Numbered from the whole stretch's first letter, positions 1-13,576 are shown. The stretch is DNA of 63,859 bases, filler included, from Octopus bimaculoides (GCF_001194135.2; 6 parts of 6 records of this genome joined end to end with filler, not necessarily neighbours in it); one strand, 5' to 3'. The notes: generated by a model not told the origin, from the sequence alone. Made by a program: numbers and translations.

Positions 1-116
1 TTCATGTCTATATGTATGTATGAGTATATTCTCTCAACAGTGTAAAAATATAAAAATACTTAATGAGAAACTTAGTTTAATTACGTTCAGTCATCAAAAA
101 ATATAACAGAAGACTA

Positions 117-125
117 ACTTACCTG
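117..125 (-). promoter_or_regulatory. 5' splice donor ending the giant exon
   Basis: Minus strand reads CAG|GTAAGT, a perfect GT-AG donor consensus. Confidence 0.8.
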
Positions 126-3100
126 AGTGTGTTTTAGCAATTTCATCAATAGTTTCGAATGTAATATCATCGGTCCACTCTTGTAATTCTGATTCTTCTT
201 CGCTTTCTTCTCTCTTGGATAGATCCGGATCACTTTGGTAGAGTGGGTTTTCTTTATCCAAGTGAAAACCATCAGCAAACACATTAATATTGTCATCGAA
301 ATCGTCTCCGTCTTTCGGCGAATCGATAACATTTTTGATAAGTAATTTTCCCCTGACGATTCTCAAATCTTCTTCCGCATCGGATGTTGAAACACTTTCC
401 GGTTCTGTGTTCAATTCATAGATTTTATGTGCTTCGATGCTCGATGAATTATTTACAAGAGTGGTCGGTCGTGCCAAGGCTGGTGTGGAAGAATTCTTCT
501 GTACATATTCCATCGTAATAGTCTGTTTGGGCGGCACGTTTGTAGTTTGTGACGGTATCAAAATTGCTTTTTGGTAGTTGACTTGTGGCAAAAACCTATA
601 TTCTGTCGAAGTTTCTACTATTTCTGTTTCACCTTCGGAGCTGACCGTTTCTGTTCCCATTCCTGAATCTACAAAATTTTCGGAATGGTTTTTTTTAACA
701 ACAGTAGGTTCTGGCGGCTTCATCTGAGAATGTAACACATGATTTGAAGATGTTTGTAGTATAGTTGCCTCCGGTTTATTTACATTCGGCATGAACTGGT
801 GATTAATCCTTTTCTGTTTCTTCATTTGATGGTTTTCATTATCGGAGAGTTCATCTCCACTTTCAGATGAATGAGTATCGTTTGTATTATTTTCCATTTT
901 TGTTCGGTTGATTTCACAATAAATAACGTGCTTTATTTGGTTGTGTTCCCCAGTTGATGGTGTTAAACTGACCACTTTATACTGATGATTCGAATCATTA
1001 TCGTCTGGCCTATCCTCAATATGGTTTTCAATTTCCTTCGAAGTTTCTCGATAAATTATCGGAGAAGGTGTTATTGTTGTTTCTAAGCCGTTATCTAACT
1101 TGGAAATATATGCTGGTTCTGAAACTTCAGTGTGCTCTTCTATAAAATTAGATTCCATTTTGGTGTCTACCACTTCTTTTGCTGGTATTGGGCGCAATTC
1201 GCTTTTCACTTTCTCGTATAAAAATTCAGTACTGCCTTCACCTGAACTATTATATAAGGAAGGCCGGGATCTTAATTTAACTGGCTTGCTATTTACATTC
1301 ATGACTGTATCTTTCGGCACCTCAAATGCTTTGATTCTACGGTGTACGTTTCCCTTGATTAAAGCTTCCCTTTTTTGTTCATTTATCGCTATACTTCCAT
1401 CTTCAATGTCGTTTTCTCCGTCATTTAGTGTGGGCGAAAGCAGAAAGCTTTGACGTTGTTCCGATGTCACAAAGCTTTCTACAATAGCTGGACTAGAAAT
1501 TTCAACATTCCTAGACGATGGTGTTTTATAATTTTCAGAAGTTGTCAAACCGGTCTCTGTGTTTGATATGACCGCTTGGGTTGGTTGCTGTGTAATAATT
1601 GAATTTTCCGAAAATGTATTTTGAGCGGTTTGAGCAAGAATATTTGGTTGAGACTCGAGCGTTTCATCGCTAATTAATTTATTCTTTAACGGTTGCATAA
1701 TATTATAGTCAATGACTCCATCGGCTCTGATACGTTTGTTTATTTCACTTGGGCTTTCTACTGTCCACAGGTCATTGTTTTCATTCCTATTGATTTCACT
1801 CGAAGGCAAAGTTTCTACAGGTGTATTAATATGTGCGTGTACATCTTCAGCAGTTTCGAAGTCTTTCTTGACTGGTGAAGCAGCAACCATTTGGTTAGAA
1901 GTTTGTTGAATTTCAGGGGCAACATATTCAGTGCCGTTTTTCACTAAAGGGTTCTTAACAATGAAATAGTCTGCCTCCGATTTATGTTGTAGATGTGAAG
2001 CCCATTCTTCCTCAGGGTATTCTGAGCTTCGTATTTCTTTAATTTCTCGATGTGAGCGCTGCGTCTGATGTTGAACGTCAACCGAGTCGGGAGAAGTTTT
2101 CTCAAATGAACTAAGTGCATTCAAATTCTCAACACGAGACCGATCACCGCTGACATCATGATTCACAACTTCTGAACCGGTTAAGTTTGCTTCAACTACT
2201 GTTCCGGGTCTAGCATCATTGTAACCAGTTAAACTTGCGGCGTCAGCTGGCTTATTGGGTTGAGACGCGAGTGGTTCATTCGCGGTAATAGGAGTCGTCC
2301 AACGAGTTATTTGATCGTTGTTTTTGTTGGCATCAATTGTTTCATGTTCTCTTAGTAATCCGTTTGAATCTTGCAGGTGTCGAGGGTGAACAGTACCGTT
2401 CGTAAGGTATTCAACTGGTTCTGCAGTAGACTTGTCGCTTGTTTTCTTCGTCTCACCGAAAATTGATCGCCCTGATTCGAAAATACGACGGAGGAAATTT
2501 ACTGGTTTTCCGGTCACCACTTGCTCTTTCTCTGTTTCATTCGTGCTTTTGATGACCGTTGGTTCAACTTTCACATTCTCTTCACTGTACTCTTGGGAGG
2601 CAAACTCTCCAAGAAAATTGCTGCCCAGACTACTACAGCTGCTGGAGCTTCTACTGACTGTTGCCGAGCCTGGGTATTTCGCGTTTTGCTCGCCGTTAAA
2701 ATCTCTATTGCTTTCACTCTCTTTCGATGCAGCCAATACAACAGATTCATTTTCTCGCACATTTTCTCCTTGAGTTTTTTCAACTGAACTCAATCCGTAC
2801 ACTAATCTCTCTCCCGTACCCGTGTCGTGTTCTGGGCTAACACTTGTGCTACTTTCTGTTATGACGGTATTTGTAACTGCAGGGTATGTAGATATAGTTC
2901 CATTGCTCTTTGTTATTGTTTTAGCTGCTGCTGTTGCAGTTGAATCACTTCTTATCAGCGGTGTCTGATTACCCTCTGGTGGTTGTTTAAGCCGGGTTAA
3001 CATCTCAGAGTTGGTTGAATAATAGGGAATGTATGAAACACGGTCGAGATTACTGCCAGAATTGTCTTCTTTTAAATGCGTTTCTTCTCCTTCTACTGTC

Positions 3101-6100
3101 CTTCCTTCCTCTTCTTCTTTGTCGTCTTCTTTCTTTTCCTCCCCTTCCTCTTCTTTATTACCAACACTGTCTCCTAAATATGTCCCACTAACCACTACAG
3201 TTTGTATATTTTCAACACTAGTTGGAGTAGAATGTATTTCACTGGCGATTGTCGGCACAATATTATATTCTGCTTCAACTAAAGTAATTTCTTCTCCCAC
3301 CACCACTCCTGTTTCGTCCGATTTTTTTAACACTTTCTGAGTCAAATCTGTTGTAGATGTTTCAATTATTGTCGTAGTGGTTGTTGTTATTGTTGTAGTT
3401 ATTGGTGTTATGTCCGTTGCTATATCTTTTATTACCCCTTTTTCATTGGTGTCAACAGAAGCACATGACTGAACAAACGAAGGAGAGCTTCTGAAGAAGG
3501 TATTGTTACTTTTTGACACGCCTTTCTTTGTTAAGAGGTGTTTCTCTCTTTCTCCTACCTTGTTTACTTCAAGCGCAGAAACTGAACTCAATGTGTTTTC
3601 ATTATCAATTAGTATATTTTCTGAAATCACAATTTCTTTGTCCTTCTCGTCTTCTTTATGTTTTTCTTCTGACATTACCATTACCTCTTCTACTTCGACC
3701 TTTTCTATCTGGCTTTCCTCCTTCTCTAACGACTCCTCTTCTCTTTCTTCTTCTCTCTCTCCTGCTACCACGACTACTTCAGTTGACCCTATCACTACCA
3801 CCTCTTCACTCTCTTTTTCGTCTTTTTCTTGTTCTTTCCTTTCTTCATGGTCTATGTCACGCTCTATTTCTCCGACAATGAGGTCTATTTTTCCACTTGT
3901 ATTTTCATTTGCATTTATTTCTTCCAGTGTTTCCCCACTCGTAACTGCCATTCCAGTCCCAGTTTCCATTTCTCCCTTAACTTCGTTGATATCTTCTGTT
4001 TTTACACTGTAGAAGATTTCAATTTCATCTCTTACATCATTCAAATCGTCAGTTTTTCTATTCGCCTCTGGAGGATCGCTTTCCACTGCACTGGCAATGG
4101 GTGGTTGATTTGCTTTGGGTATTTGTTTTTCTTCGTTCGACATGGAGAGAAACGAACCTTGCTTATAACATTCTGGTAATTCTGTATGGTCGCTTATTAT
4201 CTCGTTACTTCCTTCATTGTTTTCCCTATGCAAAACATACGCCATTACGCTCTCGAATTTATTAGGTATCATATCAGGAACATCTAATGGTAGACTCTCT
4301 GTAAGGCTTATCGTATCCTCTTCGACATTCATACGTTCAGCCTGCTCAGTATTCATCGCCGATGAAGCCTGAAGCCCTTCTTCTTTTTCTATTACAACCT
4401 CGTCATTGCCGGGGATAACAACGGGTTGTACTTCAAAATCAGATGAAATATCCACGGGTGGGTTCATTTCCGAAATAACTTGTATATTTTCCTTTGTTTC
4501 CGAAGAAGGGGCAACTTCATAGCTTATAGGGGTAACTTCGAGATCTTCACCTACTACATCATCTAGTGAAGGAAGCGTTTCTTGTGTGACGGTAGATAGG
4601 CTAACTACCACAGTTTCACCTACGACTTCGTTCTCCACTGAAGGGAGAGCTTCTTGTTTGACGGTTGGTAGGTAAACTTCTACAACTTCATGTATAACTT
4701 CACTGTCCACTGAATGGACAGCTTCTTGAGCGACGGTTGGTACGCTGACTTCCACAACTTCGTGTACAACTACGCTATCCACTGAAGAGACGTCTTCTTG
4801 TGTGACGGTTGGTAGACTAACTTCCACAGCTTCATGTACGACTTCACTGTCCACTGGAGGAACAATTTCTTGTGTGACGGTTGGTAGGCTAACTTCCACA
4901 ACTTCATGTACGACTTCACTTTCCACTGAAGGGACAGCTTCTTGTGTGACGGTTGGTAGGCTAACTTCCACAACTTCATGTACGACTTCGTTCTCCACTG
5001 AAGGGAGAGCTTCTTGTTTGACGGTTGGTAGGTAAACTTCTACAACTTCATGTATAACTTCACTGTCCACTGAATGGACAGCTTCTTGAGCGACGGTTGG
5101 TACGCTGACTTCCACAACTTCGTGTACAACTACGCTATCCACTGAAGAGACATCTTCATGTGTGACGGTTGGTAGACTAACTTCCACAACTTCATGTACG
5201 ACTTCACTGTCCACTGAAGGGAGAGCTTCTTGTGTGACGTTTGGAAGGATAACTTCAACAGAATCCTGTATAACTTCTTTGCTTACTGAAAGGATAGATT
5301 CTTGTGTGTTTAATGGTGGGATAACCTCCACGTACTTGTGTGCAACTTCAGTGTTCAGGGTACTGAATTCTTGTGGCTGAATTAGTGGGGTTAGCGCATA
5401 AAAACTCTGTGCAGTATTACTGGTTACAGAATCAGTATTCTCTTGGACCTTTGTATCGGGAGCAATCTCATTTGTTTTAAGGATAATTTCTTCTGTTTGT
5501 TGAGCCGGAATATTTTTATTTCTTATCTGTGTAATTCGGCTGTTTACAATCCTGAGTCTTTCTTGAACACTGGGTCTACGTGATTGCTCAGTCTTAATAA
5601 TTTCGCCAGTTATTTCAGAGTCATTCAATGAGAGCACATCAGCAACGCTCTTATCTGGGACAAAATTTTCTTCATCTTTTGTAGCAGAAGTAATTTCTTT
5701 AACATCATCAGCATCTTCTTTCTTCACGAAAGTGATAGATTCTTCCGTTTTTTTAAAGAGGGGTTCATCACAAGTTTTCAATATAGTTTCGCTTTTCATT
5801 GCAGGCAAGGTTTCGGCTTCCTTGACTGAAGAAATTTCAGCAAAGTTTGTCAAATCTGTCGATGGGCTAACTTCCACAGTCTCATGCATCTCTCCGTCCT
5901 GCAAAGCAGAAGTTTCTTGTGCTACTGTTAGCGGGCTATTTTCTATAGTCTCATATACAATTTCTTTGTTTACTGAAGGGAGAGTTTCTTGTATGTCTGT
6001 GGGTGGGCTAACTTCCACGGTCTCATGTACAACTTTACTGTCAGGTGAAGGCAGGAATCCTTTAGCTGATGTTACATCAACTGCTCTTTCTCCAATATGT

Positions 6101-9100
6101 TTGTTAACAATTCTGAGTCTTTCTTGAGCAGTTGGTCTGTGTTTCTCATTCACAGTTGCGTTATCTTCTAGGATGTGTGTCTGAGTACCGTTCAACAAAA
6201 TAGTTTCATCGTCTCCTGCATTTCCACCAATATTATGATTCTCTTTCTCTGAATACATGTCATTTTCTTTCTTCCAAGGTTGAAAATTAACATATGTTTC
6301 TGTTTCATCATCCATATATCTTGTTGGCGGCCAGATCTTTGCAAGTTTTCTTACTTTGTGTTTTCTGACAGTCTTCGAAACGTCGAAAATCGACAATTCT
6401 TGTATATTGGGTTTGTTATGAACTTTTTCTGGACGTTGTGCTAAATTTTTTTTCCTGATTTCGGCATCCTCTCTACCAGACGATTCAGTTTCTTCTTTTC
6501 TAATTGGTTTTACAGACTTCTCACTAAGCTCGTTTCCTAGTTCAGCTTCAACTTCAAGCTCTCTATTGGCATCAATTTTATCGGTAATCTGGTTTTCTAT
6601 TTGTTGTTCTACGATTTCGGATTCGCCTGATATTTCTGATGGAATATCTTTTACTATGAATTCTTCATTTCCACTGGTTCTGATTCCATTGCTGTACTCC
6701 TGGTCGGTCACTGGTGACTCTGAAATATTTCTTGAGTACAACTGTGATTCAGTTTTTCCCTCAACTGTGGAAAACTTCCCCAAGGTGATGCTGTTATTGT
6801 TGTTATCGTCGTCGTCGTCGTCGTCGTCATGTATATTGTTGATCTGGCTACTGTTTTGATCGTTAACGACATTACTGTCGTTGATAGTTTCCACCTTTCT
6901 ATTCACCTCAACAACAAGCACCTCTTCTGTCATATCTTCTCCGCGAACATAATTATCCGTTTTTGTTTCAATGACACCTTTTATATCGTTGTTGTTGCTG
7001 TAGAGATCATTGTTGTTGTTGTTTTTAATGTCGATATTACGGTTGTCGTTGTTGGTGATCGTATTAATTATTTCGTAACTGCTATTCTCGTCGCTTTCGT
7101 TCCGGATGTTGTCGTTAATTTTAGACATCGATTCCAATCTACATTGCTGCTCAGGAAACATTATATCTGATGTGATCGTAGTTTGAAAACCAGTCGACGG
7201 TAGCAGTAGAGACTCTTCTGTTTGTTGTTGCTTGACGTTAATGAGACGTTCAGAAACCAGCCCCACTTCCTCAGCTTCGGACGTATTAAATGATGTGTCC
7301 GATATATTTGTCAGTATATTTGGCTCTGTTTTATAAATAGTGTCTCCACTTTGCATAGCATTGTCTGAAGTAGAATAGAGAGGAACGGAGGCCACATCTA
7401 CGTTGATGAAAGTATTTTCTGTTATCTCTGTTTGCTGTTTTTGCTGCAGTTCATCGTTGAGTAGTTCTTTCTTTTCTTCCCCTGTTTTCAGTTCTTTTTC
7501 CTCTCGTTGTACTTCGTTTTGCTTGTTCTGTACACGAAATATCTGATTCAAATTACTTTCTACTGGTCTGTATCCTATTGGTTTCGTTCCGATTGTATGC
7601 ACCCAAGAAGTATCTGATATTTCTCCGCCATTTATAGAGTGGGCTTTATTTTGATGCAAGTCATCTTTGTCGTAGATGCACGTAGAAAATATCTTCTGCA
7701 ATTCCTTCACACGGCCTCGTTTGATGCTCTGTTTCATTGTCTTGTACATGTCGTCGCTTAAGTGCTGGACTACGTGGTTAGCATCTTGATATATAATTGT
7801 GAAATTTCCGTTCACACTGCTGCTATCTCCTTCAACACTCGCTGTCGGTGGCATTGCACGAGAATGTGACGACAGCGTGGTATGAGACGAGGTAGGGGAA
7901 GAGGAAGTCTCTGTCGACTGTGTCGATGGTGACGAAGAGAAGAAATGGGAAGTTGTCGGGGATGTCGACGATTGTGTTAGCAGAGGTGTTTCTCTTTCAG
8001 GCTGCATCGGCGACATCGTTTCAGGTGGTGTCGGTGGCGATGAGTGCAAAGTTTGTGTAGAAGGTGATTGTGAGAGAGGCAAAGTAGCAGACGAATTAAG
8101 GGACGAAACCTCAGATAGTGTCATGGGTGATTCTGCAGACACTACCATAGATGAGTCCAGAAATGATTCCACAGATTGTGTCACTGATGGTGCCAAAGAC
8201 AGTTCCAGTGCTGGTACTAGGGGCGGTACCTCACATAATTTTGGAGATTGCGGTTCAGACACTGCAACAGTTGGTCTTACAGATAGTTCCTCAACTGGGT
8301 TTAAAGAGATAGGCTCAAGCAATGCATTAGATTGCAGCACAGTCAATTCCTTAGCCTGTACTTCAGATTGTGAATAAGACTGTGGTGCCTCGGTCTGTTT
8401 GTTTTCCAATGGCGTAGATGGTACCTCCAGCATTTTCTCATCCAGTGTCACAGATGCTACCTCAGGCAACTTTTCATCTAATATCACAGATGGCACCTCA
8501 GGGAGTTTATCTCCCAATGTCACAGATGGTACCTCAGGAGGTTTATCTCCCAATGTCACAGATTGTAACTCAGGGAGTTTGTCTCCTAAAGTGACTACTG
8601 GCACCTCAGACAATTTATCTCCTAATGTCACATATGGTACATCGGACAGTTCGTCTCCAAATGTGGGAGATTGTATATCATGTAGTTCCTCATCCAATGT
8701 TACAGACGGTACCTCCCGCAATTTCTCATCCAGTGTCACAGAGGGTACCTCAGGAAGTTTATCTCCCAATGTAACAGATGGCACATCGGGCAGTTTGTCT
8801 CCCAATGTCATAGATGGTACATCAGGAAGTTTCTCGCTCAATGACACAGAGGATACCTCAGGAAGTTTGTCACCTAATGTTACAGCTGAAACATCGGGCA
8901 GTTTGTCTCCCGTTGTGACAGCTGCAACGTCAGGCAGTTTATCTTCCAGTGTCACAGATGATACCTTTGGCAGTTTGTCATCTAATGTCGCTGAGGGTAC
9001 CTCAGGCAGTTTCTCATCTAATGTCACTGATGGTACCTCAGGTAGTTTTTCACTCAATGTAACAGATGGTACCTCAGGCAGTTTCTCATCTAATGTCACT

Positions 9101-12100
9101 GATGGTACCTCAGGTACTTTTTCACTCAATGTAACAGATCGTACCTCAGGCAATTTCTCATCTAATGTCACTGATGGTACCTCAGGCAGTTTCTCATCTA
9201 ATGTCACTGATGGTATCTCAGGTAGTTTTTGACTCAATGTAACAGATGGTACCTCAGGCAATTTCTCATCTAACGTCACTGATAGTACCTCAGGCAGTTT
9301 CTCATCTAATGTCACTGATGGTACCTCAGGCAGTTTCTCATCTAATGTCACTGATGGTATCTCAGGTAGTTTTTCACTCAATGTAACAGATGGTACCTCA
9401 GGTNNNNNNNNNNNNNNNNNNNNNNNNNNNNNNNNNNNNNNNNNNNNNNNNNNNNNNNNNNNNNNNNNNNNNNNNNNNNNNNNNNNNNNNNNNNNNNNNN
9501 NNNNNNNNNNNNNNNNNNNNNNNNNNNNNNNNNNNNNNNNNNNNNNNNNNNNNNNNNNNNNNNNNNNNNNNNNNNNNNNNNNNNNNNNNNNNNNNNNNNN
9601 NNNNNNNNNNNNNNNNNNNNNNNNNNNNNNNNNNNNNNNNNNNNNNNNNNNNNNNNNNNNNNNNNNNNNNNNNNNNNNNNNNNNNNNNNNNNNNNNNNNN
9701 NNNNNNNNNNNNNNNNNNNNNNNNNNNNNNNNNNNNNNNNNNNNNNNNNNNNNNNNNNNNNNNNNNNNNNNNNNNNNNNNNNNNNNNNNNNNNNNNNNNN
9801 NNNNNNNNNNNNNNNNNNNNNNNNNNNNNNNNNNNNNNNNNNNNNNNNNNNNNNNNNNNNNNNNNNNNNNNNNNNNNNNNNNNNNNNNNNNNNNNNNNNN
9901 NNNNNNNNNNNNNNNNNNNNNNNNNNNNNNNNNNNNNNNNNNNNNNNNNNNNNNNNNNNNNNNNNNNNNNNNNNNNNNNNNNNNNNNNNNNNNNNNNNNN
10001 NNNNNNNNNNNNNNNNNNNNNNNNNNNNNNNNNNNNNNNNNNNNNNNNNNNNNNNNNNNNNNNNNNNNNNNNNNNNNNNNNNNNNNNNNNNNNNNNNNNN
10101 NNNNNNNNNNNNNNNNNNNNNNNNNNNNNNNNNNNNNNNNNNNNNNNNNNNNNNNNNNNNNNNNNNNNNNNNNNNNNNNNNNNNNNNNNNNNNNNNNNNN
10201 NNNNNNNNNNNNNNNNNNNNNNNNNNNNNNNNNNNNNNNNNNNNNNNNNNNNNNNNNNNNNNNNNNNAATGTCAATGATGGTACCTCAGGTAGTTTTTCA
10301 CTCAATGTAACAGATGGTACCTCAGGCAATTTCTCATCTAATGTCACTGATAGTACCTCAGGCAGTTTCTCATCTAATGTCACTGATGGTACCTCAGACA
10401 GTTTCTCATCTAATGTCACTGATGGTACCTCAGGTAGTTTTTCACTCAATGTAACAGATGGTACCTCAGGTAGTTTTTCACTCAATGTAACAGATGGTAC
10501 CTCAGGCAGTTTCTCATCTAATGTCACTGATGGTACCTCATGTAGTTTTTCACTCAATGTTATAGATGGTACCTCAGGCAATTTCTCATCTAATGTCATT
10601 GATGGTACCTCAGGCAGTTTCTCATCTAATGTCACTGATGGTATTTCAGGTAGTTTTTCACTCAATGTAACAGATGGTACCTCAGGCAGTTTCTCATCTA
10701 ATGTCACTGATGGTACCTCATGTAGTTTTTCACTCAATGTAATAGATGGTACCTCAGGCAGTTTCTCATTTAATGTCACTAATAGTACCTCAGGCAGTTT
10801 CTCATCTAATGTCACTGATGGTACCTCAGGCAGTTTCTCATCTAATGTCACTGATGGTACCTCAGGTAGTTTTTCAGTCAATGTTACAGATGGTACCTCA
10901 GGCAATTTCTCATCTAATGTCACTGAGGGTACCTCAGGTAGTTTTTCACTCAATGTGATGGATGGTACCTCAGGCAGTTTCTTATCTGGTGTGACAGATG
11001 GCACCTCATGCAATGTCACCGATGTTTCCTTCTTTAATACATCAGGTTGTATTGTATCCAGTGTCAAAGAGGATGCTGTGGTTATTATTTCAGTTTGAGG
11101 TGGGGAAGGTGCCGCGGACAATGATGGAGATAATTCTACTGACGATATTGATTGTGGAATGGAAGACGAAGATAGTGTATGCTGTGTGTATAAAGGTGTA
11201 GAAGTTGGTTCTTGAGATTGTAACTGCTGGTGAGCGTGTCTGGGAGAGGATTTTGCAATTTGCGAGGGTAATAAAGGAAGTGAGGAGTCGGTGCGAAGAG
11301 TTGGTGGGATTGTGGAATTGGTGGTTGTTGAATTCGTTGATTGTAATTGCGGCAATGACTCTGACGAAAGCTTCGCTGTTGACTTCGGTTTACCCAGAAA
11401 TAATTGTGAAAATTTCTTGAAGGGTTGTTGTAATGGCTTCGAATATGGCTTTGGAAGAAACGCACCCCATTTCGAAAATTCTGGCTGACGTATAATATTT
11501 GGAGCAACAATGTCTGGGATATCTTTTTTATTTTCAGTGTTATCAGTATTATCATTCTTACTATCCAATTTAGCTTCCGAAGATAATGGATCTGACGAAT
11601 TATTACCTTCTGGCTTTGGCTCTTCCTTTTCCTTGTCTAATAGTTTCTCTTCAGCGTAAGAGGAATTGGAAGGAAGAGAAGTAGCAGAAGGGAAAGATTG
11701 AGAGGAAACGTTGTCCTTTTTGTCTGGGAGAACCTTATCTTCGTTAGAGAGCAACGTGGATTCGTGCTTTCCAGCATGAGATGATGACTCTTCGGAACTG
11801 TACATATCTATTGTAGTCAAATCAGGTTTTTCACAGAGTTGGTCTGATGTCACATGAGGGACCTCTTTATTTTCCGCCATAGTTGAACTACTTTGAATAT
11901 GGTTTAACAGAGACAGTGGCTTTTCTGCAGTTCCAGACACATCACATTCTTGTTCATCATTCTTTTCTGTGTATGCACCAATCAGATCTTTTTCTCTTTG
12001 TGAATTACCATTTCTTACAAATGCATTTTCATCATCGGAAGAAGCATGGTTATTTATAGACTCTTCAGTTTCTATTTTTTGTTCTTTTTCATCTTCTTCA

Positions 12101-13341
12101 ATAATTTTTTCTTTCTCTTTTCCCGTAATTATTGCAGCTTTTTCTCCTTCTTTCTCGATTCCTTTTACAACTTTTCCATTTTCTTCAAATATAACATCCT
12201 TTCGGCTTTCTTCAGTTGTTACAACTTCTTTTTCAATTTCTTCACTTACTACTTCTCTTTCGCTTTCTCCAATTCTTTCAACATCTTTTTCTTTTTCTTC
12301 AGTTTTTGCCGCATCTTTTTCTACTTCTTCACTTACTACATCTCTTTCTCTTTCTTCAATTTTTTCAACATCTTTTTCTTCAGTTTTTGCCGTATCTGAT
12401 TCTATTTCTTCAATTTTCGCCGCATCTTTTTGTATTTCTTCACTTACCACTATATCTCTTTCTCTTTCTTCAATTCTTTCAATATCTTTTTGTATTTCTT
12501 CAATTTTCGCCGCATCTTTTTGTATTTCTTCACTTACCACTATATCTCTTTCTCTTTCTTCAATTCTTTCAATACCTTTTTCGATTTCTTCAGTTTTCGC
12601 CGCATCTTTTTGTATTTCTTCACTTACCACTATATCTCTTTCTCTTTCTTCAATTCTTTCAATATCTTTTTCTTTTTCTTCAGTCTTCGCCGCGTCTTTT
12701 TCTATTTCTTCAGTTTTTACCGCATCTTTTTCTATTTCTTCGAGTGTTACACCCTTTTCTTCACGAACATAGTTTTCTCTTTCTTCAAATTTTTGTATAT
12801 CTTTTTCTTTTTCTTTTTCATTTTCTTCAGTTTTTACATCTTTTTCTATTCCTTCAGTCAGTACATCTTTTTCTTTCCCTTTAGTTATTACATCTTTTTC
12901 TTGTTCTTCAGTTCTTACATCTTTTACTATATCTTCAATTACTACATCTTTTTCTTTTTCTTCCTTTTCTTCTGCTTCTAATTCCTCGACGCCTTCTTTC
13001 TGGCTTTCGGCAGATCTCAACGAAGCAATATATTCTTGAGGTGTTTCTAGTCCTCCGTTTAAATTTGAATCCAAATTCAAATCTAGAGAAGTTTCAGGGA
13101 GATATTTTTTAAGTGACTTACTAGCACTAGAGGCTGTGGTGCTGTTATCCTGCGACGTTTCTTTTCTGAGAACGCCATTCTTCACAGCGTCGTTTTCTTT
13201 GATGTTGGGATCTTCGTGTGTTTCGATTCCTTCGACTTTCTTGGGTTTACTCGGCGAAGAAAAACTCTTTTTAAAGCTGTTTCTAAGCAAATGAAATATA
13301 CTCTTTGGACGTTCTGGATTTTTTTCTCCTTCTGGGTCCAT
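123..13341 (-). CDS. Coding part of a giant exon: ~4406 aa acidic, E/S/T/V/K/P-rich, largely disordered repeat protein; N-terminal part of a gene continuing left of the window
   Basis: Single stop-free frame on both sides of the 864-N gap. ATG in AAAAGGAAA-ATG context with in-frame TAA at 13369-13371 upstream. Canonical donor CAG|GTAAGT at 123/122 (phase 1), so the ORF-track tail 94-122 (KLVFCYIF) is probably intron read-through. No SINE or dinucleotide microsatellite in 13 kb, unlike the rest of the window. Continuity through the gap is inferred. Confidence 0.85.
4560..5345 (-). repeat. Coding tandem repeat, 72 bp / 24 aa (VDSEVVHEVVEVSLPTVTQEAVPS), ~10 copies
   Basis: TTCATGTACGACTTC recurs at 4831, 4903 and 4975 (72-bp spacing); 4621-4860 is nearly identical to 4981-5220. 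Confidence 0.95.
5860..6045 (-). repeat. Second, diverged cluster of the 24-aa repeat (VVHETVEVSPPT...), ~2.5 copies
   Basis: Translation VVHETVEVSPPTDIQETLPSVNKEIVYETIENSPLTVAQETSALQDGEMHETVEVSPS matches the 24-aa unit. Confidence 0.8.
8415..11022 (-). repeat. Coding tandem repeat, 36 bp / 12 aa (D/S-EKLPEVPSVTL), spanning the 9404-10267 gap
   Basis: Plus-strand unit CATCTAATGTCACTGATGGTACCTCAGGCAGTTTCT repeated on both gap flanks; ~48 copies visible, ~70 if the gap is filled by repeats. Confidence 0.95.
12210..12741 (-). repeat. Coding E/K-rich repeat, 90 bp / 30 aa built from three 10-aa subunits
   Basis: CGCATCTTTTTGTATTTCTTC at 12421, 12511 and 12601 (90-bp spacing); EEIQKDAAKT-EEIEKGIERI-EERERDIVVS. 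Confidence 0.92.
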
Positions 13342-13386
13342 TTTCCTTTTAACTTTTTTCTTTTTCTTTTATTGTTGTATTTTATT

Positions 13387-13419
13387 TTATTCTAATTTTA
13401 TAACAAGAATATAAATCAT
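13387..13419 (-). other. Upstream ORF (MIYILVIKLE*) in the 5'UTR part of the giant exon
   Basis: ATG ATT TAT ATT CTT GTT ATA AAA TTA GAA TAA read directly; in frame with the main ORF, ending 45 nt before its ATG. Confidence 0.5.
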
Positions 13420-13452
13420 TTGGGCTCCAGGATTCTTTCGCTGTCGGTTTCT

Positions 13453-13481
13453 CTGCAAGAAGAAGAAAAAATCGAGATTAG
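13453..13481 (-). promoter_or_regulatory. Branch point, polypyrimidine tract and 3' splice acceptor of the giant exon
   Basis: Minus strand reads CTAATCTCGATTTTTTCTTCTTCTTGCAG|AGAAACC; CTAAT lies ~25 nt upstream of the AG. This defines a 111-nt 5'UTR portion (13452-13342). Confidence 0.75.
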
Positions 13482-13483
13482 AT

Positions 13484-13576
<93 letters not shown>
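13484..13576. repeat. Compound trinucleotide microsatellite (TAC)n(TAA)n
   Basis: Read directly; abuts the branch point and runs into the first join spacer. Confidence 0.95.

What the first reader, a model, noticed from the sequence alone, without database searches (positions are those of the whole stretch)
123..13452. A ~13.3-kb single exon encoding ~4,400 aa of disordered repeat protein
Seen: strong acceptor at 13452, ATG 111 nt inside, one open frame, perfect phase-1 donor at 123/122, and no SINE or dinucleotide microsatellite, whereas the rest of the window is dominated by them. All three frames close before the ATG, so this is a first coding exon spliced from an upstream non-coding exon, not an internal cassette. 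Established: giant exons encoding acidic disordered spacers occur in ankyrins, titin and MAP1B/futsch-type genes. Inference: a lineage-specific giant N-terminal isoform of a cytoskeletal or scaffold gene whose folded domains lie left of the window.
Basis: partly seen in the sequence, partly recalled or inferred. Interest (0 to 1): 0.75.

Follow-up and report, generated by a model that had tools for sequence, protein, structure and literature searches.

The report
Giant octopus exon, acidic repeat protein
This is a real, expressed 13.3-kb coding exon of an uncharacterised Octopus bimaculoides gene (RefSeq LOC106868339). It encodes more than 4,100 residues of very acidic, repeat-rich, probably unfolded protein joined to a small conserved C-terminal domain. 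It is a good example of a known kind of gene rather than a new kind.

Summary
On the minus strand one open frame runs from the ATG at 13341 to a phase-1 donor at 123/122. The acceptor is at 13452, and all three frames are closed before the ATG. RNA contigs from 4 runs and raw RNA-seq from 3 runs cover the exon and stop at both junctions, with no canonical or abundant internal splice.

The N gap (9404-10267) lies inside a 36-nt (LPEVPSVTLDEK) tandem array. Both flanks are open only in that peptide's frame. RNA reads enter the gap in frame, and read pile-up implies about 1 kb of extra units. The O. vulgaris and Argonauta orthologous exons have no gap.

The gene is RefSeq LOC106868339, "uncharacterized". 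It is not an ankyrin, titin or MAP1B isoform. After the giant exon comes a single terminal exon of 206 codons. That exon encodes a beta-sheet/helix domain with no Pfam, PDB or fold match, found only in molluscs, a nemertean and an annelid.

dN/dS against O. vulgaris is 0.59, with 0 nonsense changes where 22 were expected.

Best reading, inferred only: a long acidic, PEVK-like flexible tether anchored by its conserved C-terminal module. Octopus and Argonauta expanded different repeat arrays yet reached similar exon lengths.

The parts
13453..13576 (-). 3' end of the upstream intron: (TAA)20(TAC)12 microsatellites, a polypyrimidine tract and the AG acceptor (13454-13453)
   Evidence: Sequence. 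TRF. RNA reads and contigs leave the window sequence at 13453.
123..13452 (-). The giant exon: 13,330 nt as assembled, including an 864-nt N gap of estimated length
   Evidence: Boundaries from sequence and RNA. RNA-seq coverage is continuous with no canonical or abundant internal splice.
13342..13452 (-). 5'-UTR part of the exon. Stops in all three frames. Contains a 10-codon uORF (ATG 13419 to TAA 13387) in the frame of the main ORF
13339..13341 (-). Start codon, opening MDPEGEKNPERPKSIFHLLRNSFKK. This is the same start as RefSeq XP_052829595 and as the O. vulgaris and Argonauta orthologues
12167..12963 (-). Acidic Glu/Lys/Asp-rich repeats (27-, 30-, 57-, 87-, 90- and 111-nt periods; aa about 127-392, e.g. 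EEIQKDAAKTEEIEKGIERIEERERDIVVS). Net charge is -15 to -20 per 100 aa
   Evidence: TRF, translation, charge profile. O. vulgaris has a different copy number.
11362..11484 (-). Conserved island GAFLPKPYSKPLQQPFKKFS, shared with Argonauta
10268..11012 (-). 36-nt array, 5' flank of the gap: about 20 units of LPEVPSVTLDEK
   Evidence: TRF, units listed. Only one frame is open. Pfam IMCp matches this repeat.
9404..10267 (.). Assembly gap (N) inside the 36-nt array; true length unknown. Most likely about 0.8-1.4 kb of further in-frame units
   Evidence: Frame and register analysis. RNA reads run into the gap reading ...GAT GAG AAA TTG|CCT GAG, i.e. DEKL|PE. Read pile-up gives an effective array length of 2.7-3.1 kb against 1.68 kb assembled. 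The O. vulgaris array is gapless at about 82 units.
8416..9403 (-). 36-nt array, 3' flank of the gap: about 27 units, degenerating towards the 3' end
   Evidence: Among units, third codon positions are 2-3 times more diverse than first and second positions.
7657..7812 (-). Conserved island NGNFTIIYQDANHVVQHLSDDMYKTMKQSIKRGRVKELQKIF. It is 66% identical in Argonauta and 53% in P0002
6790..6820 (-). (TCG)n, encoding a poly-Asp run with an in-frame +TCG length polymorphism in 50-80% of reads
4579..5260 (-). 72-nt array: 9.5 units of EVVHEVVEVSLPTVTQEAVPSVDS. It appears to be the counterpart, by position and shared SLP..T..P.V.D motif, of the roughly 120-unit, 20-aa array of Argonauta
   Evidence: TRF, units, Argonauta sequence.
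124..1353 (-). C-terminal cluster of islands shared with Argonauta, P0002 and P0004 (aa 3997-4406): GNVHRRIKAFE, YEKVKSELRPIPAK, HQYKVVSLTP..IKHVIYCEI, DSGMGTETVSSEGETE
124..438 (-). Module A, conserved across molluscs: DLRIVRGKLLIKN..DDFDDNINVF..FHLDKENPLYQSDPD..ITFETIDEIAK. It contains an NPxY motif
   Evidence: phmmer hits covering this part in more than 20 long molluscan proteins. Alignment A1.
1..122 (-). Start of the downstream intron (donor GTAAGT at 122-117). The next exon is outside the window and begins TCATGAAGAAAG, which with the last exon base G reads V-M-K-K
   Evidence: Sequence. Loose ends at 123 in 4 runs. RNA depth collapses below 121. Same residues follow IAKTHS in P0001.

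Best explanation
What is shown.
- The stretch is the constitutive giant first coding exon of Octopus bimaculoides LOC106868339.
- The gene has an upstream non-coding exon, this exon of about 13.3 kb, a long intron (31 kb in Argonauta, 60 kb in O. vulgaris), and one terminal exon of 206 codons.
- The exon encodes at least 4,117 residues, or about 4,400 with the gap. The protein is extremely acidic, with a net charge of about -410. It is rich in Glu, Ser, Val, Thr, Lys and Pro and poor in aromatic residues. It has no signal peptide and no membrane segment.
- It is built from several tandem arrays. These are Glu/Lys-rich 9-30-aa units, at least 47 units of 12-aa LPEVPSVTLDEK, and 9.5 units of a 24-aa EVVHEVVEVSLPTVTQEAVPSVDS repeat. 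Fast-evolving spacer and a dozen short conserved islands separate them.
- It is under weak but real purifying selection. The arrays change copy number quickly between species.

What is inferred.
- The long region acts as an unfolded, charged, PEVK/PEVT-like flexible tether: an entropic spring or spacer.
- Where it attaches is probably set by the conserved C-terminal module. That module comprises an acidic motif cluster with NPxY, a beta-sheet-plus-helix domain of about 110 aa, and an invariant-type C-terminal [D/S]-hydrophobic-hydrophobic-Tyr/Phe end. The short N-terminal basic island may also contribute.
- Length and composition, rather than sequence, are what selection keeps.
For: Gene structure and expression. 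Identity with RefSeq XP_052829595 and its 206-aa tail. The tail is one exon in the O. vulgaris and Argonauta loci.

Composition, charge and hydropathy: (maximum 19-aa Kyte-Doolittle hydropathy is 1.19).

Repeats.

Selection against O. vulgaris over 2,985 non-repeat codons: dN 0.047, dS 0.080, ratio 0.59 (chi-square p = 1.5e-7). There are 0 nonsense changes where 22 were expected (P = 1e-10). The Argonauta orthologue is an uninterrupted 4,637-codon exon although only about 26% identical overall.

Family and domain: 85 homologues, two conserved modules, and a confident AlphaFold core (pLDDT 88-95 for residues about 130-240 of the 313-aa construct).

PEVK-like character: the 12-aa unit is 58% P+E+V+K and contains PEVP, and Pfam's alveolin 'EKIVEVP' repeat model matches it.
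Against: - No experiment, tissue label or localisation supports any function.
- Disorder is inferred from composition only.
- A dN/dS of 0.59 is only weak constraint.
- The 24-aa and 12-aa units are fairly hydrophobic (Val/Leu-rich) and could form beta-structure rather than a random coil.
- The readings of NPxY and the C-terminal motif as PTB- and PDZ-type ligands come from memory of motif classes and were not tested.
- The exact exon length and the continuity across the gap are not directly read.
Confidence: 0.55

Rival explanations
1. One reading: an alternative, lineage-specific giant N-terminal isoform of a known cytoskeletal or scaffold gene (ankyrin, titin, MAP1B/futsch type), with its folded domains downstream.
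For: There is a giant single exon encoding acidic, disordered-looking sequence. UniProt auto-names the O. vulgaris orthologue 'Titin'.
Against: No Pfam domain of those families is found in the exon, the tail or the homologues. Only 206 codons in one exon follow. All 11 RefSeq isoforms contain the exon. Long N-terminal regions are present across molluscs.
Confidence: 0.04
2. The Val/Pro/Glu-rich 12-aa and 24-aa arrays are not a floppy spacer. Instead they form beta-rich filaments or a cortical membrane skeleton, as articulin, alveolin and epiplasmin repeats do in protists.
For: Pfam IMCp (alveolin, PF12314) matches the LPEVPSVTLDEK array at 38 bits, above its 21.1-bit cut-off, in 5 stretches. 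The arrays have near-neutral hydropathy, unlike the rest of the protein. From my own knowledge, articulins also use 12-residue Val/Pro repeats.
Against: The match is to a short periodic motif in a low-complexity array. Alveolins are restricted to alveolates. The arrays carry a net charge of -9 to -20 per 100 aa, which disfavours packing. The arrays differ completely in unit and copy number between Octopus and Argonauta.
Confidence: 0.12
3. It is a secreted or surface mucin/adhesin-like repeat protein. NCBI names the Biomphalaria relative 'serine-rich adhesin for platelets'.
For: It has Ser/Thr/Pro-rich tandem repeats. The Argonauta array is 15% Thr.
Against: There is no signal peptide or hydrophobic segment; the N-terminus is MDPEGEKNPERPK and maximum hydropathy is 1.19. 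The start codon is fixed by upstream stops in all frames. Cysteine is only 0.2%. The NCBI name is driven by composition.
Confidence: 0.04
4. The open frame is not a working protein-coding sequence. It is either a chance ORF in expanding repeats or a decaying pseudo-exon.
For: Constraint is weak (dN/dS 0.59). The O. vulgaris assembly has a 1-nt frame break in the array.
Against: There are 3,093 and 1,024 stop-free codons either side of the gap, against 7-10 stops per 100 codons in the other frames. There are 0 nonsense changes where 22 were expected. The ORF is kept in Argonauta at about 26% identity. The polymorphic indels are in frame. The exon is spliced and expressed in more than 15 RNA runs. 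The O. vulgaris break is an extra C in a C run, so probably an assembly error.
Confidence: 0.01

Closest known systems
Titin PEVK region; invertebrate titin-like PEVK/PEVT regions (Drosophila Sallimus, C. elegans TTN-1)
   Same: Long, unfolded, Glu/Val/Pro/Lys-rich tandem repeats. They contain PEVP-type motifs beside poly-acidic segments, and copy number varies. The proposed role is the same: an entropic spring or spacer. This comparison rests on my own knowledge.
   Different: No Ig, FN3 or kinase domains anywhere. The whole protein comes from two coding exons, whereas titin's PEVK comes from many small exons. P+E+V+K is 58% in the unit and about 37% overall, below titin's PEVK. No muscle link is shown.
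Giant ankyrin-G / ankyrin-B exons (480/440-kDa isoforms)
   Same: A single exon of about 6-8 kb encodes thousands of residues of extended or disordered polypeptide (PMC7401806, PMC6765234).
   Different: The ankyrin exons are alternatively spliced, neuron-specific inserts between folded ankyrin domains. Here the exon is constitutive, is the first coding exon, and makes up 95% of the protein. There are no ANK, ZU5 or death domains.
MAP1B / Drosophila Futsch
   Same: A very large acidic repeat-bearing protein encoded mostly by one huge exon, with conserved ends and a lineage-specific repeat expansion in the middle (own knowledge).
   Different: There is no MAP1 heavy- or light-chain homology. 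The conserved C-terminal module here is a different, unannotated domain.
Alveolins (Pfam IMCp, PF12314) and articulins
   Same: Short periodic Val/Pro/Glu/Lys repeats (EKIVEVP against EKLPEVP). The Pfam model scores above its threshold.
   Different: Those are membrane-skeleton proteins of protists. Here the match is confined to one array, the taxon is wrong, and the architecture differs. The resemblance is most likely convergent.
Unnamed lophotrochozoan family defined here (for example Argonauta GAB1604531, O. vulgaris CAI9734611, Patella KAK6172901, Physella XP_059168082, Liolophura XP_064607872, Tubulanus XP_074651457, Dimorphilus CAD5124642)
   Same: Orthologous or homologous C-terminal modules A and B, and the same exon plan in the cephalopods examined.
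   Different: N-terminal regions range from absent to about 4,700 aa and are unalignable outside cephalopods. The tandem arrays are specific to octopods.

Membership tests
Unnamed lophotrochozoan 'module A+B' family (this gene's true family) | C-terminal domain B (INVEH..EEIxGD..HADG..NFDxVxExVxL..GKAxIxVKVxAERIVPIDxEFNxWRKSxAIVTRxIEIDL..RRRLY) ending in [D/S]-hydrophobic-hydrophobic-Y/F | tested here: met
   phmmer gave 85 hits, 51 of them at E<=1e-10. Alignment A1 has invariant E175, V192, E195, P199 and R216. The tail of P0001 ends ...NDFMY. This part lies outside the window; the link is proven by RNA contigs and reads crossing 123.
Unnamed lophotrochozoan 'module A+B' family | Module A (DLRVVRGxxLIKN..DDFDDNINxF..NPLYxSDxD..ITFETVD) just before the exon junction | tested here: met
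   Window 124-438. It is aligned in more than 20 long molluscan proteins.
Unnamed lophotrochozoan 'module A+B' family | Exon plan: ATG shortly after an acceptor, one giant exon, a phase-1 donor a few codons after module A, and a single terminal exon | tested here: met
   O. bimaculoides. Argonauta L004. O. vulgaris L005. Unknown taxon L001.
Titin / connectin / Sallimus | Ig and FN3 domain arrays, and usually a kinase domain | tested here: not met
   No such Pfam hit in the exon, the tail or P0002.
Titin / connectin / Sallimus | PEVK segment (about 70% or more P, E, V, K; PPAK and poly-E motifs) | tested here: inconclusive
   The 12-aa unit is 7/12 P+E+V+K and contains PEVP. The whole exon is about 37%. 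It is similar in kind but below the classical composition.
Giant ankyrins | ANK repeats, ZU5-UPA and death domain flanking an alternatively spliced giant exon | tested here: not met
   No Pfam hits. The exon is present in all 11 RefSeq isoforms. Only one 206-codon exon lies downstream.
MAP1B / Futsch | MAP1 N-terminal and light-chain homology regions | tested here: not met
   No Pfam or PDB sequence match.
Alveolin (Pfam IMCp PF12314) | Match to the IMCp repeat model above the gathering score | tested here: met
   38 bits against a 21.1-bit cut-off, E = 2.1e-9, best stretch aa 930-1000 of the 12-aa array.
Alveolin (Pfam IMCp PF12314) | Alveolate protein of the inner-membrane-complex skeleton, with homology beyond the short repeat | tested here: not met
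   The organism is a mollusc. The match is limited to the periodic array. The homologues found are all lophotrochozoan.
Xin actin-binding repeat (lead from memory: GNVHRRIKAFEVP resembles GDVxxxxWLFETxPLD) | Match to Pfam Xin or tandem Xin repeats | tested here: not met
   The islands were scanned singly at E<=10 and gave no Xin hit.
Secreted mucins / serine-rich adhesins | Signal peptide or membrane anchor | tested here: not met
   The N-terminus is polar. Maximum 19-aa hydropathy is 1.19. Upstream stops fix the start codon.

The most novel reading that the evidence does not exclude
Total length of the tether, not its sequence, may be the selected trait. Octopus (12-aa PEVP-type array of about 72-82 units, 24-aa array of 9.5-20 units) and Argonauta (about 120 units of a 20-aa array, with only a rudimentary PEVP array) expanded different arrays. 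Both still arrived at a 13.3-14.3-kb exon. That is about twice the 6.5-kb exon of the two other, unidentified relatives that share the cephalopod-only islands (one exon plan read; probably non-octopod cephalopods). The protein would then be an octopod-specific 'molecular ruler' or spring built on a domain family that has never been studied.
Probability: 0.15. Interest if true: 0.65.

Novelty: new member of a known kind. Interest (0 to 1): 0.4.

Why it matters
- It gives a clean, well-supported example of a giant constitutive exon in a cephalopod.
- It shows how to read through an assembly gap that sits in a coding tandem array.
- It corrects database artefacts. Eleven RefSeq 'isoforms' and one O. 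vulgaris 'intron' are products of the repeat array. The names 'Titin' and 'serine-rich adhesin' are driven by composition.
- It delimits an unannotated, lophotrochozoan-restricted protein family. The family has a confidently predicted C-terminal domain with no Pfam, PDB or fold match.
- If the length-conservation idea holds, it would be a natural experiment on selection for polymer length in disordered proteins.

As it stands it is an ordinary, if large, uncharacterised gene.

Tried and rejected
- The search for homologous proteins with the 616-aa C-terminus returned nothing at all, not even the query's own protein. That search was wasted.
- A search for PacBio runs to span the gap found none. 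Logan contigs break inside the arrays, so they cannot span it.
- Single-sequence AlphaFold of the tail was useless, with pLDDT 35.
- These searches found no convincing match:
  - Pfam on the exon, tail, homologues and single islands, apart from the repeat-driven IMCp hit.
  - PDB sequence and profile searches.
  - Foldseek against the PDB, where the best hit was E = 4e-3 and TM <= 0.35, SecB-like, not a convincing match.
- Literature searches found nothing on the gene ('LOC106868339', 'giant exon' + cephalopod, PEVK + octopus).
- dN/dS against Argonauta was not attempted. At about 26% identity I judged synonymous sites likely saturated, so O. vulgaris was used instead.
- RNA editing: two A>G (transcript-sense) Ile>Val sites, at 4866 and 5784, behave like individual-specific SNPs and cannot be called editing.
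- Apparent joints are non-canonical, rare or repeat-mediated and are not treated as introns: 12099>12949 with 33 foreign letters, 'goes back' 87/141, and a 180-nt skip in one contig.
- The contig loose ends in run X7 lie in low-complexity Glu/Lys-coding sequence (3101) or at the poly-Asp indel (6805). I read them as assembly artefacts.

Full report
1. The observation

The window is T-rich on the plus strand. On the minus strand one reading frame is open from the ATG at 13341 down to 94. The sequence shows a polypyrimidine tract and ttcttgcag|A acceptor, with first exon base 13452. The ATG lies 111 nt inside the exon. The donor is CAG|GTAAGT at 123|122.

All three frames contain stops between the acceptor and the ATG. 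The in-frame one closes a 10-codon uORF.

The other two sense frames carry 289 and 419 stops, or 7-10 per 100 codons. An open frame of 1,024 + 3,093 read codons is therefore far beyond chance. Every tandem repeat TRF finds inside the exon has a period divisible by three. The only microsatellites lie in the intron at 13484-13576.

2. Expression and junctions

More than 15 RNA runs of the same organism hold the sequence; one run of the 2015 study holds none of it.

Logan RNA contigs from four runs cover 123-4650, 5179-9025, 10897-12433 and 12643-13453. They break only inside repeat arrays. They leave the window sequence exactly at 123 and at 13453.

The sequence joined at 123 begins TCATGAAGAAAG. 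With the last exon base G it reads V-M-K-K-D-S-Q-S-K-Q. These are the residues that follow ...IAKTHS in the RefSeq protein.

Raw reads of three 2026 RNA-seq runs give 27-28 reads per run crossing the acceptor into the same upstream exon sequence. At the donor, depth falls from about 45-70 to 0-7 below position 121. Coverage between is continuous, with no canonical or abundant splice joint.

So the exon and both junctions are confirmed, and the exon is not subdivided by introns.

3. The gap, tested first as asked

The N run 9404-10267 lies inside the 36-nt tandem array whose unit encodes LPEVPSVTLDEK.
- On both flanks only that frame is open. The other two have 35-43 stops per flank.
- The 5' flank ends at unit position 26 and the 3' flank resumes at unit position 3. 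If the missing DNA is more units, its length is 12+36n nt, which is always a multiple of three. The stated 864 nt keeps the frame but not the repeat register; 840 or 876 nt would.
- RNA reads running into the gap from 9402 read ...GAT GAG AAA TTG|CCT GAG, that is DEKL|PE, in frame.
- Reads pile up 2-4-fold on the array next to the gap and show many substitutions but no indels. Near-identical unassembled units therefore keep the register.
- From that pile-up, the effective array length in three runs is 2.7-3.1 kb against 1.68 kb assembled. About 1.0-1.4 kb is missing, with an extreme range of 0.3-4.4 kb depending on the baseline chosen.
- In the gapless O. vulgaris assembly the same array is about 82 units, or 2.9 kb.

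Continuity and frame are therefore strongly supported but not directly read. The '4,400 aa' figure is an estimate; 4,117 residues are read.

RefSeq models bridge the gap with a pseudo-intron. The model joins aa 1022 (...LPEVPS) to VTLSEK after the gap. The eleven 'isoforms' of 4,244-4,316 aa differ by multiples of 12 aa. I read them as alignment artefacts in the array, or possibly copy-number alleles, rather than as splicing.

4. What gene it is

The translation is identical over the 2,557 residues queried to XP_052829595, 'uncharacterized protein LOC106868339 isoform X3' of Octopus bimaculoides. After the giant exon only 206 residues follow. In the Argonauta hians and O. vulgaris loci these are one terminal exon, 31 kb and 60 kb downstream.

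Pfam finds nothing in the 3,093-aa part, the tail, the conserved islands or ten homologues. The one exception is a hit of the alveolin repeat model IMCp on the LPEVPS array.

The PDB holds no sequence relative.

5. The family

An exhaustive phmmer search with the last 720 residues found 85 proteins. All those that carry source names are 'uncharacterized' or 'hypothetical'. The named ones come from cephalopods (Argonauta, O. vulgaris), gastropods (Patella, Physella, Biomphalaria, Bulinus, Littorina, Elysia), a chiton (Liolophura), a bivalve (Mya), a nemertean (Tubulanus) and an annelid (Dimorphilus).

Two modules are conserved.
- Module A is the last 105 residues or so of the giant exon. It includes ...DDFDDNINVF...NPLYQSDPD...ITFETVD.IAK.
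- Module B is the terminal exon. It ends in a conserved [D/S]-hydrophobic-hydrophobic-Tyr/Phe carboxy-terminus.

With the 35-sequence alignment, AlphaFold predicts a confident core (pLDDT 88-95) of four or five long beta-strands followed by a helix. The flanks are low-confidence. Foldseek against the PDB gives nothing convincing (best E = 4e-3, TM <= 0.35, SecB-like). The domain is unannotated and has no evident structural relative.

Argonauta hians. The orthologue is an uninterrupted 4,637-codon exon in a locus without N. It has the same plan: an acceptor about 45 nt before the ATG and a TTTTAG|GTAAGT phase-1 donor a few codons after module A. It is only about 26% identical overall to Octopus. 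Conserved islands stand out at the N-terminus, at FLPKPY.KP.QQP.KKFS, at NGNFTIIY.DA.H.VQHL.DDM.KTMKQSIKRG.VK.LQ, and across the last 900 residues or so.

O. vulgaris. The exon is 14.26 kb with no gap. One extra C in a C-run inside the array breaks the frame, and the annotators hid it in a 109-nt 'intron'. I think this is probably an assembly error. I read through it only to align the two species.

Selection over 2,985 non-repeat codons, O. bimaculoides against O. vulgaris:

| Measure | Value |
|---|---|
| dN | 0.047 |
| dS | 0.080 |
| dN/dS | 0.59 (0.46-0.74 by region) |
| Chi-square p | 1.5e-7 |
| Nonsense changes among 464 substitutions | 0 observed, 22 expected (P = 1e-10) |

Within the 36-nt array, third codon positions are two to three times more diverse than first and second positions. 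Polymorphic indels are in frame: +TCG in a poly-Asp run at 6805, and a 180-nt two-unit skip in one contig. The single 1-nt insertion seen (6445, one run, 4 of 12 reads) lies in a T8 homopolymer.

The exon is therefore coding, under weak purifying selection. This is typical of disordered proteins.

A third genomic contig, from an unidentified organism (Logan ERR1237xxxx; protein P0002, 2,148 aa), shows the same plan with a 6.5-kb exon. P0002 and P0004 (2,175 aa) share four islands otherwise seen only in the three octopod sequences (O. bimaculoides, O. vulgaris, Argonauta). I infer, but cannot show, that they are other cephalopods.

7. The protein

| Property | Value |
|---|---|
| Glu | 13.9% |
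| Ser | 11.0% |
| Val | 9.6% |
| Thr | 8.3% |
| Lys | 7.1% |
| Pro | 6.5% |
| Cys | 0.2% |
| Trp | 0.2% |
| Net charge | -407 |
| Maximum 19-aa hydropathy | 1.19 |

There is no signal peptide and no membrane segment. The octopod proteins carry about -10 net charge per 100 aa, against -0.1 to -7.7 in other members of the family.

Arrays in O. bimaculoides:
- Glu/Lys-rich units, aa 127-392;
- the 12-aa LPEVPSVTLDEK array, aa 777 to about 1650, with at least 47 units read and about 72 with the gap;
- a 24-aa EVVHEVVEVSLPTVTQEAVPSVDS array, 9.5 units.

O. vulgaris has more copies of the 12-aa and 24-aa arrays, and its acidic region is a long uniform 10-aa array.

Argonauta has only a rudimentary PEVP-type array (KLSEVPPKLAEEPH). 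It has about 120 units of a 20-aa repeat, PVTDIVTETVDTSLPLETVP, at the position of the Octopus 24-aa array. The two appear related through a shared SLP..T...P.V.D motif.

Different arrays expanded in the two lineages, yet the exons are 13.3 kb (estimated), 14.3 kb and 13.9 kb.

8. Most likely mechanism

Shown:
- gene structure, expression and coding constraint;
- composition and rapid array turnover;
- a conserved C-terminal module with a predicted fold.

Inferred:
- The N-terminal 95% of the protein is an unfolded, strongly charged, PEVK/PEVT-like polymer acting as a flexible tether, spacer or entropic spring.
- The conserved islands, module A (NPxY and acidic Phe motifs), domain B and the C-terminal hydrophobic-Tyr end provide attachment.
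- Arrays grow and shrink by unequal exchange, because length and composition matter more than sequence.

I put the structural and coding statements at about 0.95 and the mechanism at about 0.35-0.4.

Rivals, all scored low and listed with their evidence in their own section:
- an alveolin- or articulin-like beta-filament former, supported only by the Pfam repeat hit;
- a secreted mucin or adhesin, which lacks a signal peptide;
- a non-functional ORF, which the selection tests refute.

9. Novelty

The gene model is already in RefSeq. I found no paper on it. Giant exons encoding disordered spacers are a known kind: giant ankyrins (PMC7401806, PMC6765234), and titin PEVK and MAP1B/Futsch from my own knowledge. 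This is a new, uncharacterised member built on an unannotated lophotrochozoan domain family. The independent array expansions that reach similar lengths are the one feature that might repay further work.

Noticed in passing
window 13387-13419 (-): A 10-codon uORF (ATG ATT TAT ... GAA TAA) lies in the 5'-UTR part of the exon, in the same frame as the main ORF, and ends 46 nt before the main ATG.
   Followed up: partly
window 13484-13576: Perfect (TAC)11.7 and (TAA)20 microsatellites sit in the upstream intron, right beside the polypyrimidine tract.
   Followed up: no
window 6790-6820 (-), insertion behind 6805: There is an in-frame +TCG (one extra Asp) polymorphism in a (TCG)n poly-Asp run. It appears in 50-80% of RNA reads in three runs and in three of the four RNA contig sets.
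   Followed up: yes
window 12099-12949 (-): A minor read class (3-5 reads per run, three runs) replaces 849 nt of the acidic repeat region with 33 other letters. The ends are non-canonical (AA..TC) and the net change is in frame. It may be an allele with a different acidic array or a template-switch artefact.
   Followed up: partly
window 12413-12594 (-): One RNA contig (run X10) skips 180 nt, which is exactly two 90-nt units of the acidic repeat. This is either copy-number variation or assembly collapse.
   Followed up: no
window 4866 and 5784 (+ strand T>C, i.e. A>G in the transcript): Two Ile>Val changes are seen in RNA reads. One is 10/12 reads on one mate orientation (10/13 overall) in one run, the other 6/6 in another run and 0 elsewhere. 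They could be SNPs or A-to-I editing. No matched DNA was available to decide.
   Followed up: partly
L005 about 5366-5386 (O. vulgaris OX597829.1): An extra C (CTTCCCTGAG where CTTCCTGAG is expected) breaks the frame of the giant exon inside the 12-aa array. The public annotation hides it with a 109-nt pseudo-intron. It is probably an assembly indel.
   Followed up: yes
RefSeq LOC106868339 isoforms X1-X11 (P0001, P0115-P0124): The isoform lengths 4316, 4304, 4292, 4268, 4256 and 4244 differ by multiples of 12 aa. The modelled 'introns' fall within the LPEVPS array and across the gap, so these are not real splice variants.
   Followed up: partly
L004 about 4,900-12,200 (Argonauta hians BAAFZT010000038.1): About 120 tandem units of a 20-aa repeat (PVTDIVTETVDTSLPLETVP), roughly 2,400 aa, lie in one exon. 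The public protein model (4,157 aa) omits about 480 residues of it.
   Followed up: partly
window 8399-9232, 11969-12772, 12216-12884 (+): Long antisense ORFs (183-277 aa) lie opposite the repeat arrays. They are a by-product of periodic sequence, and the RNA-seq is unstranded, so they cannot be assessed.
   Followed up: no
run X24 (same 2015 study as X1 and X2): This RNA run holds 0% of the exon's words, while sister runs hold 97-100%. Expression is therefore absent from at least one sample. Tissue labels are not available here.
   Followed up: no
database names of relatives: The O. vulgaris orthologue is auto-named 'Titin' in UniProt. Biomphalaria relatives are named 'serine-rich adhesin for platelets' by NCBI. 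Both names are artefacts of composition. The 2015 O. bimaculoides annotation split the gene into fragments (A0A0L8HVJ8, 205 aa; A0A0L8HWP4, 267 aa).
   Followed up: partly
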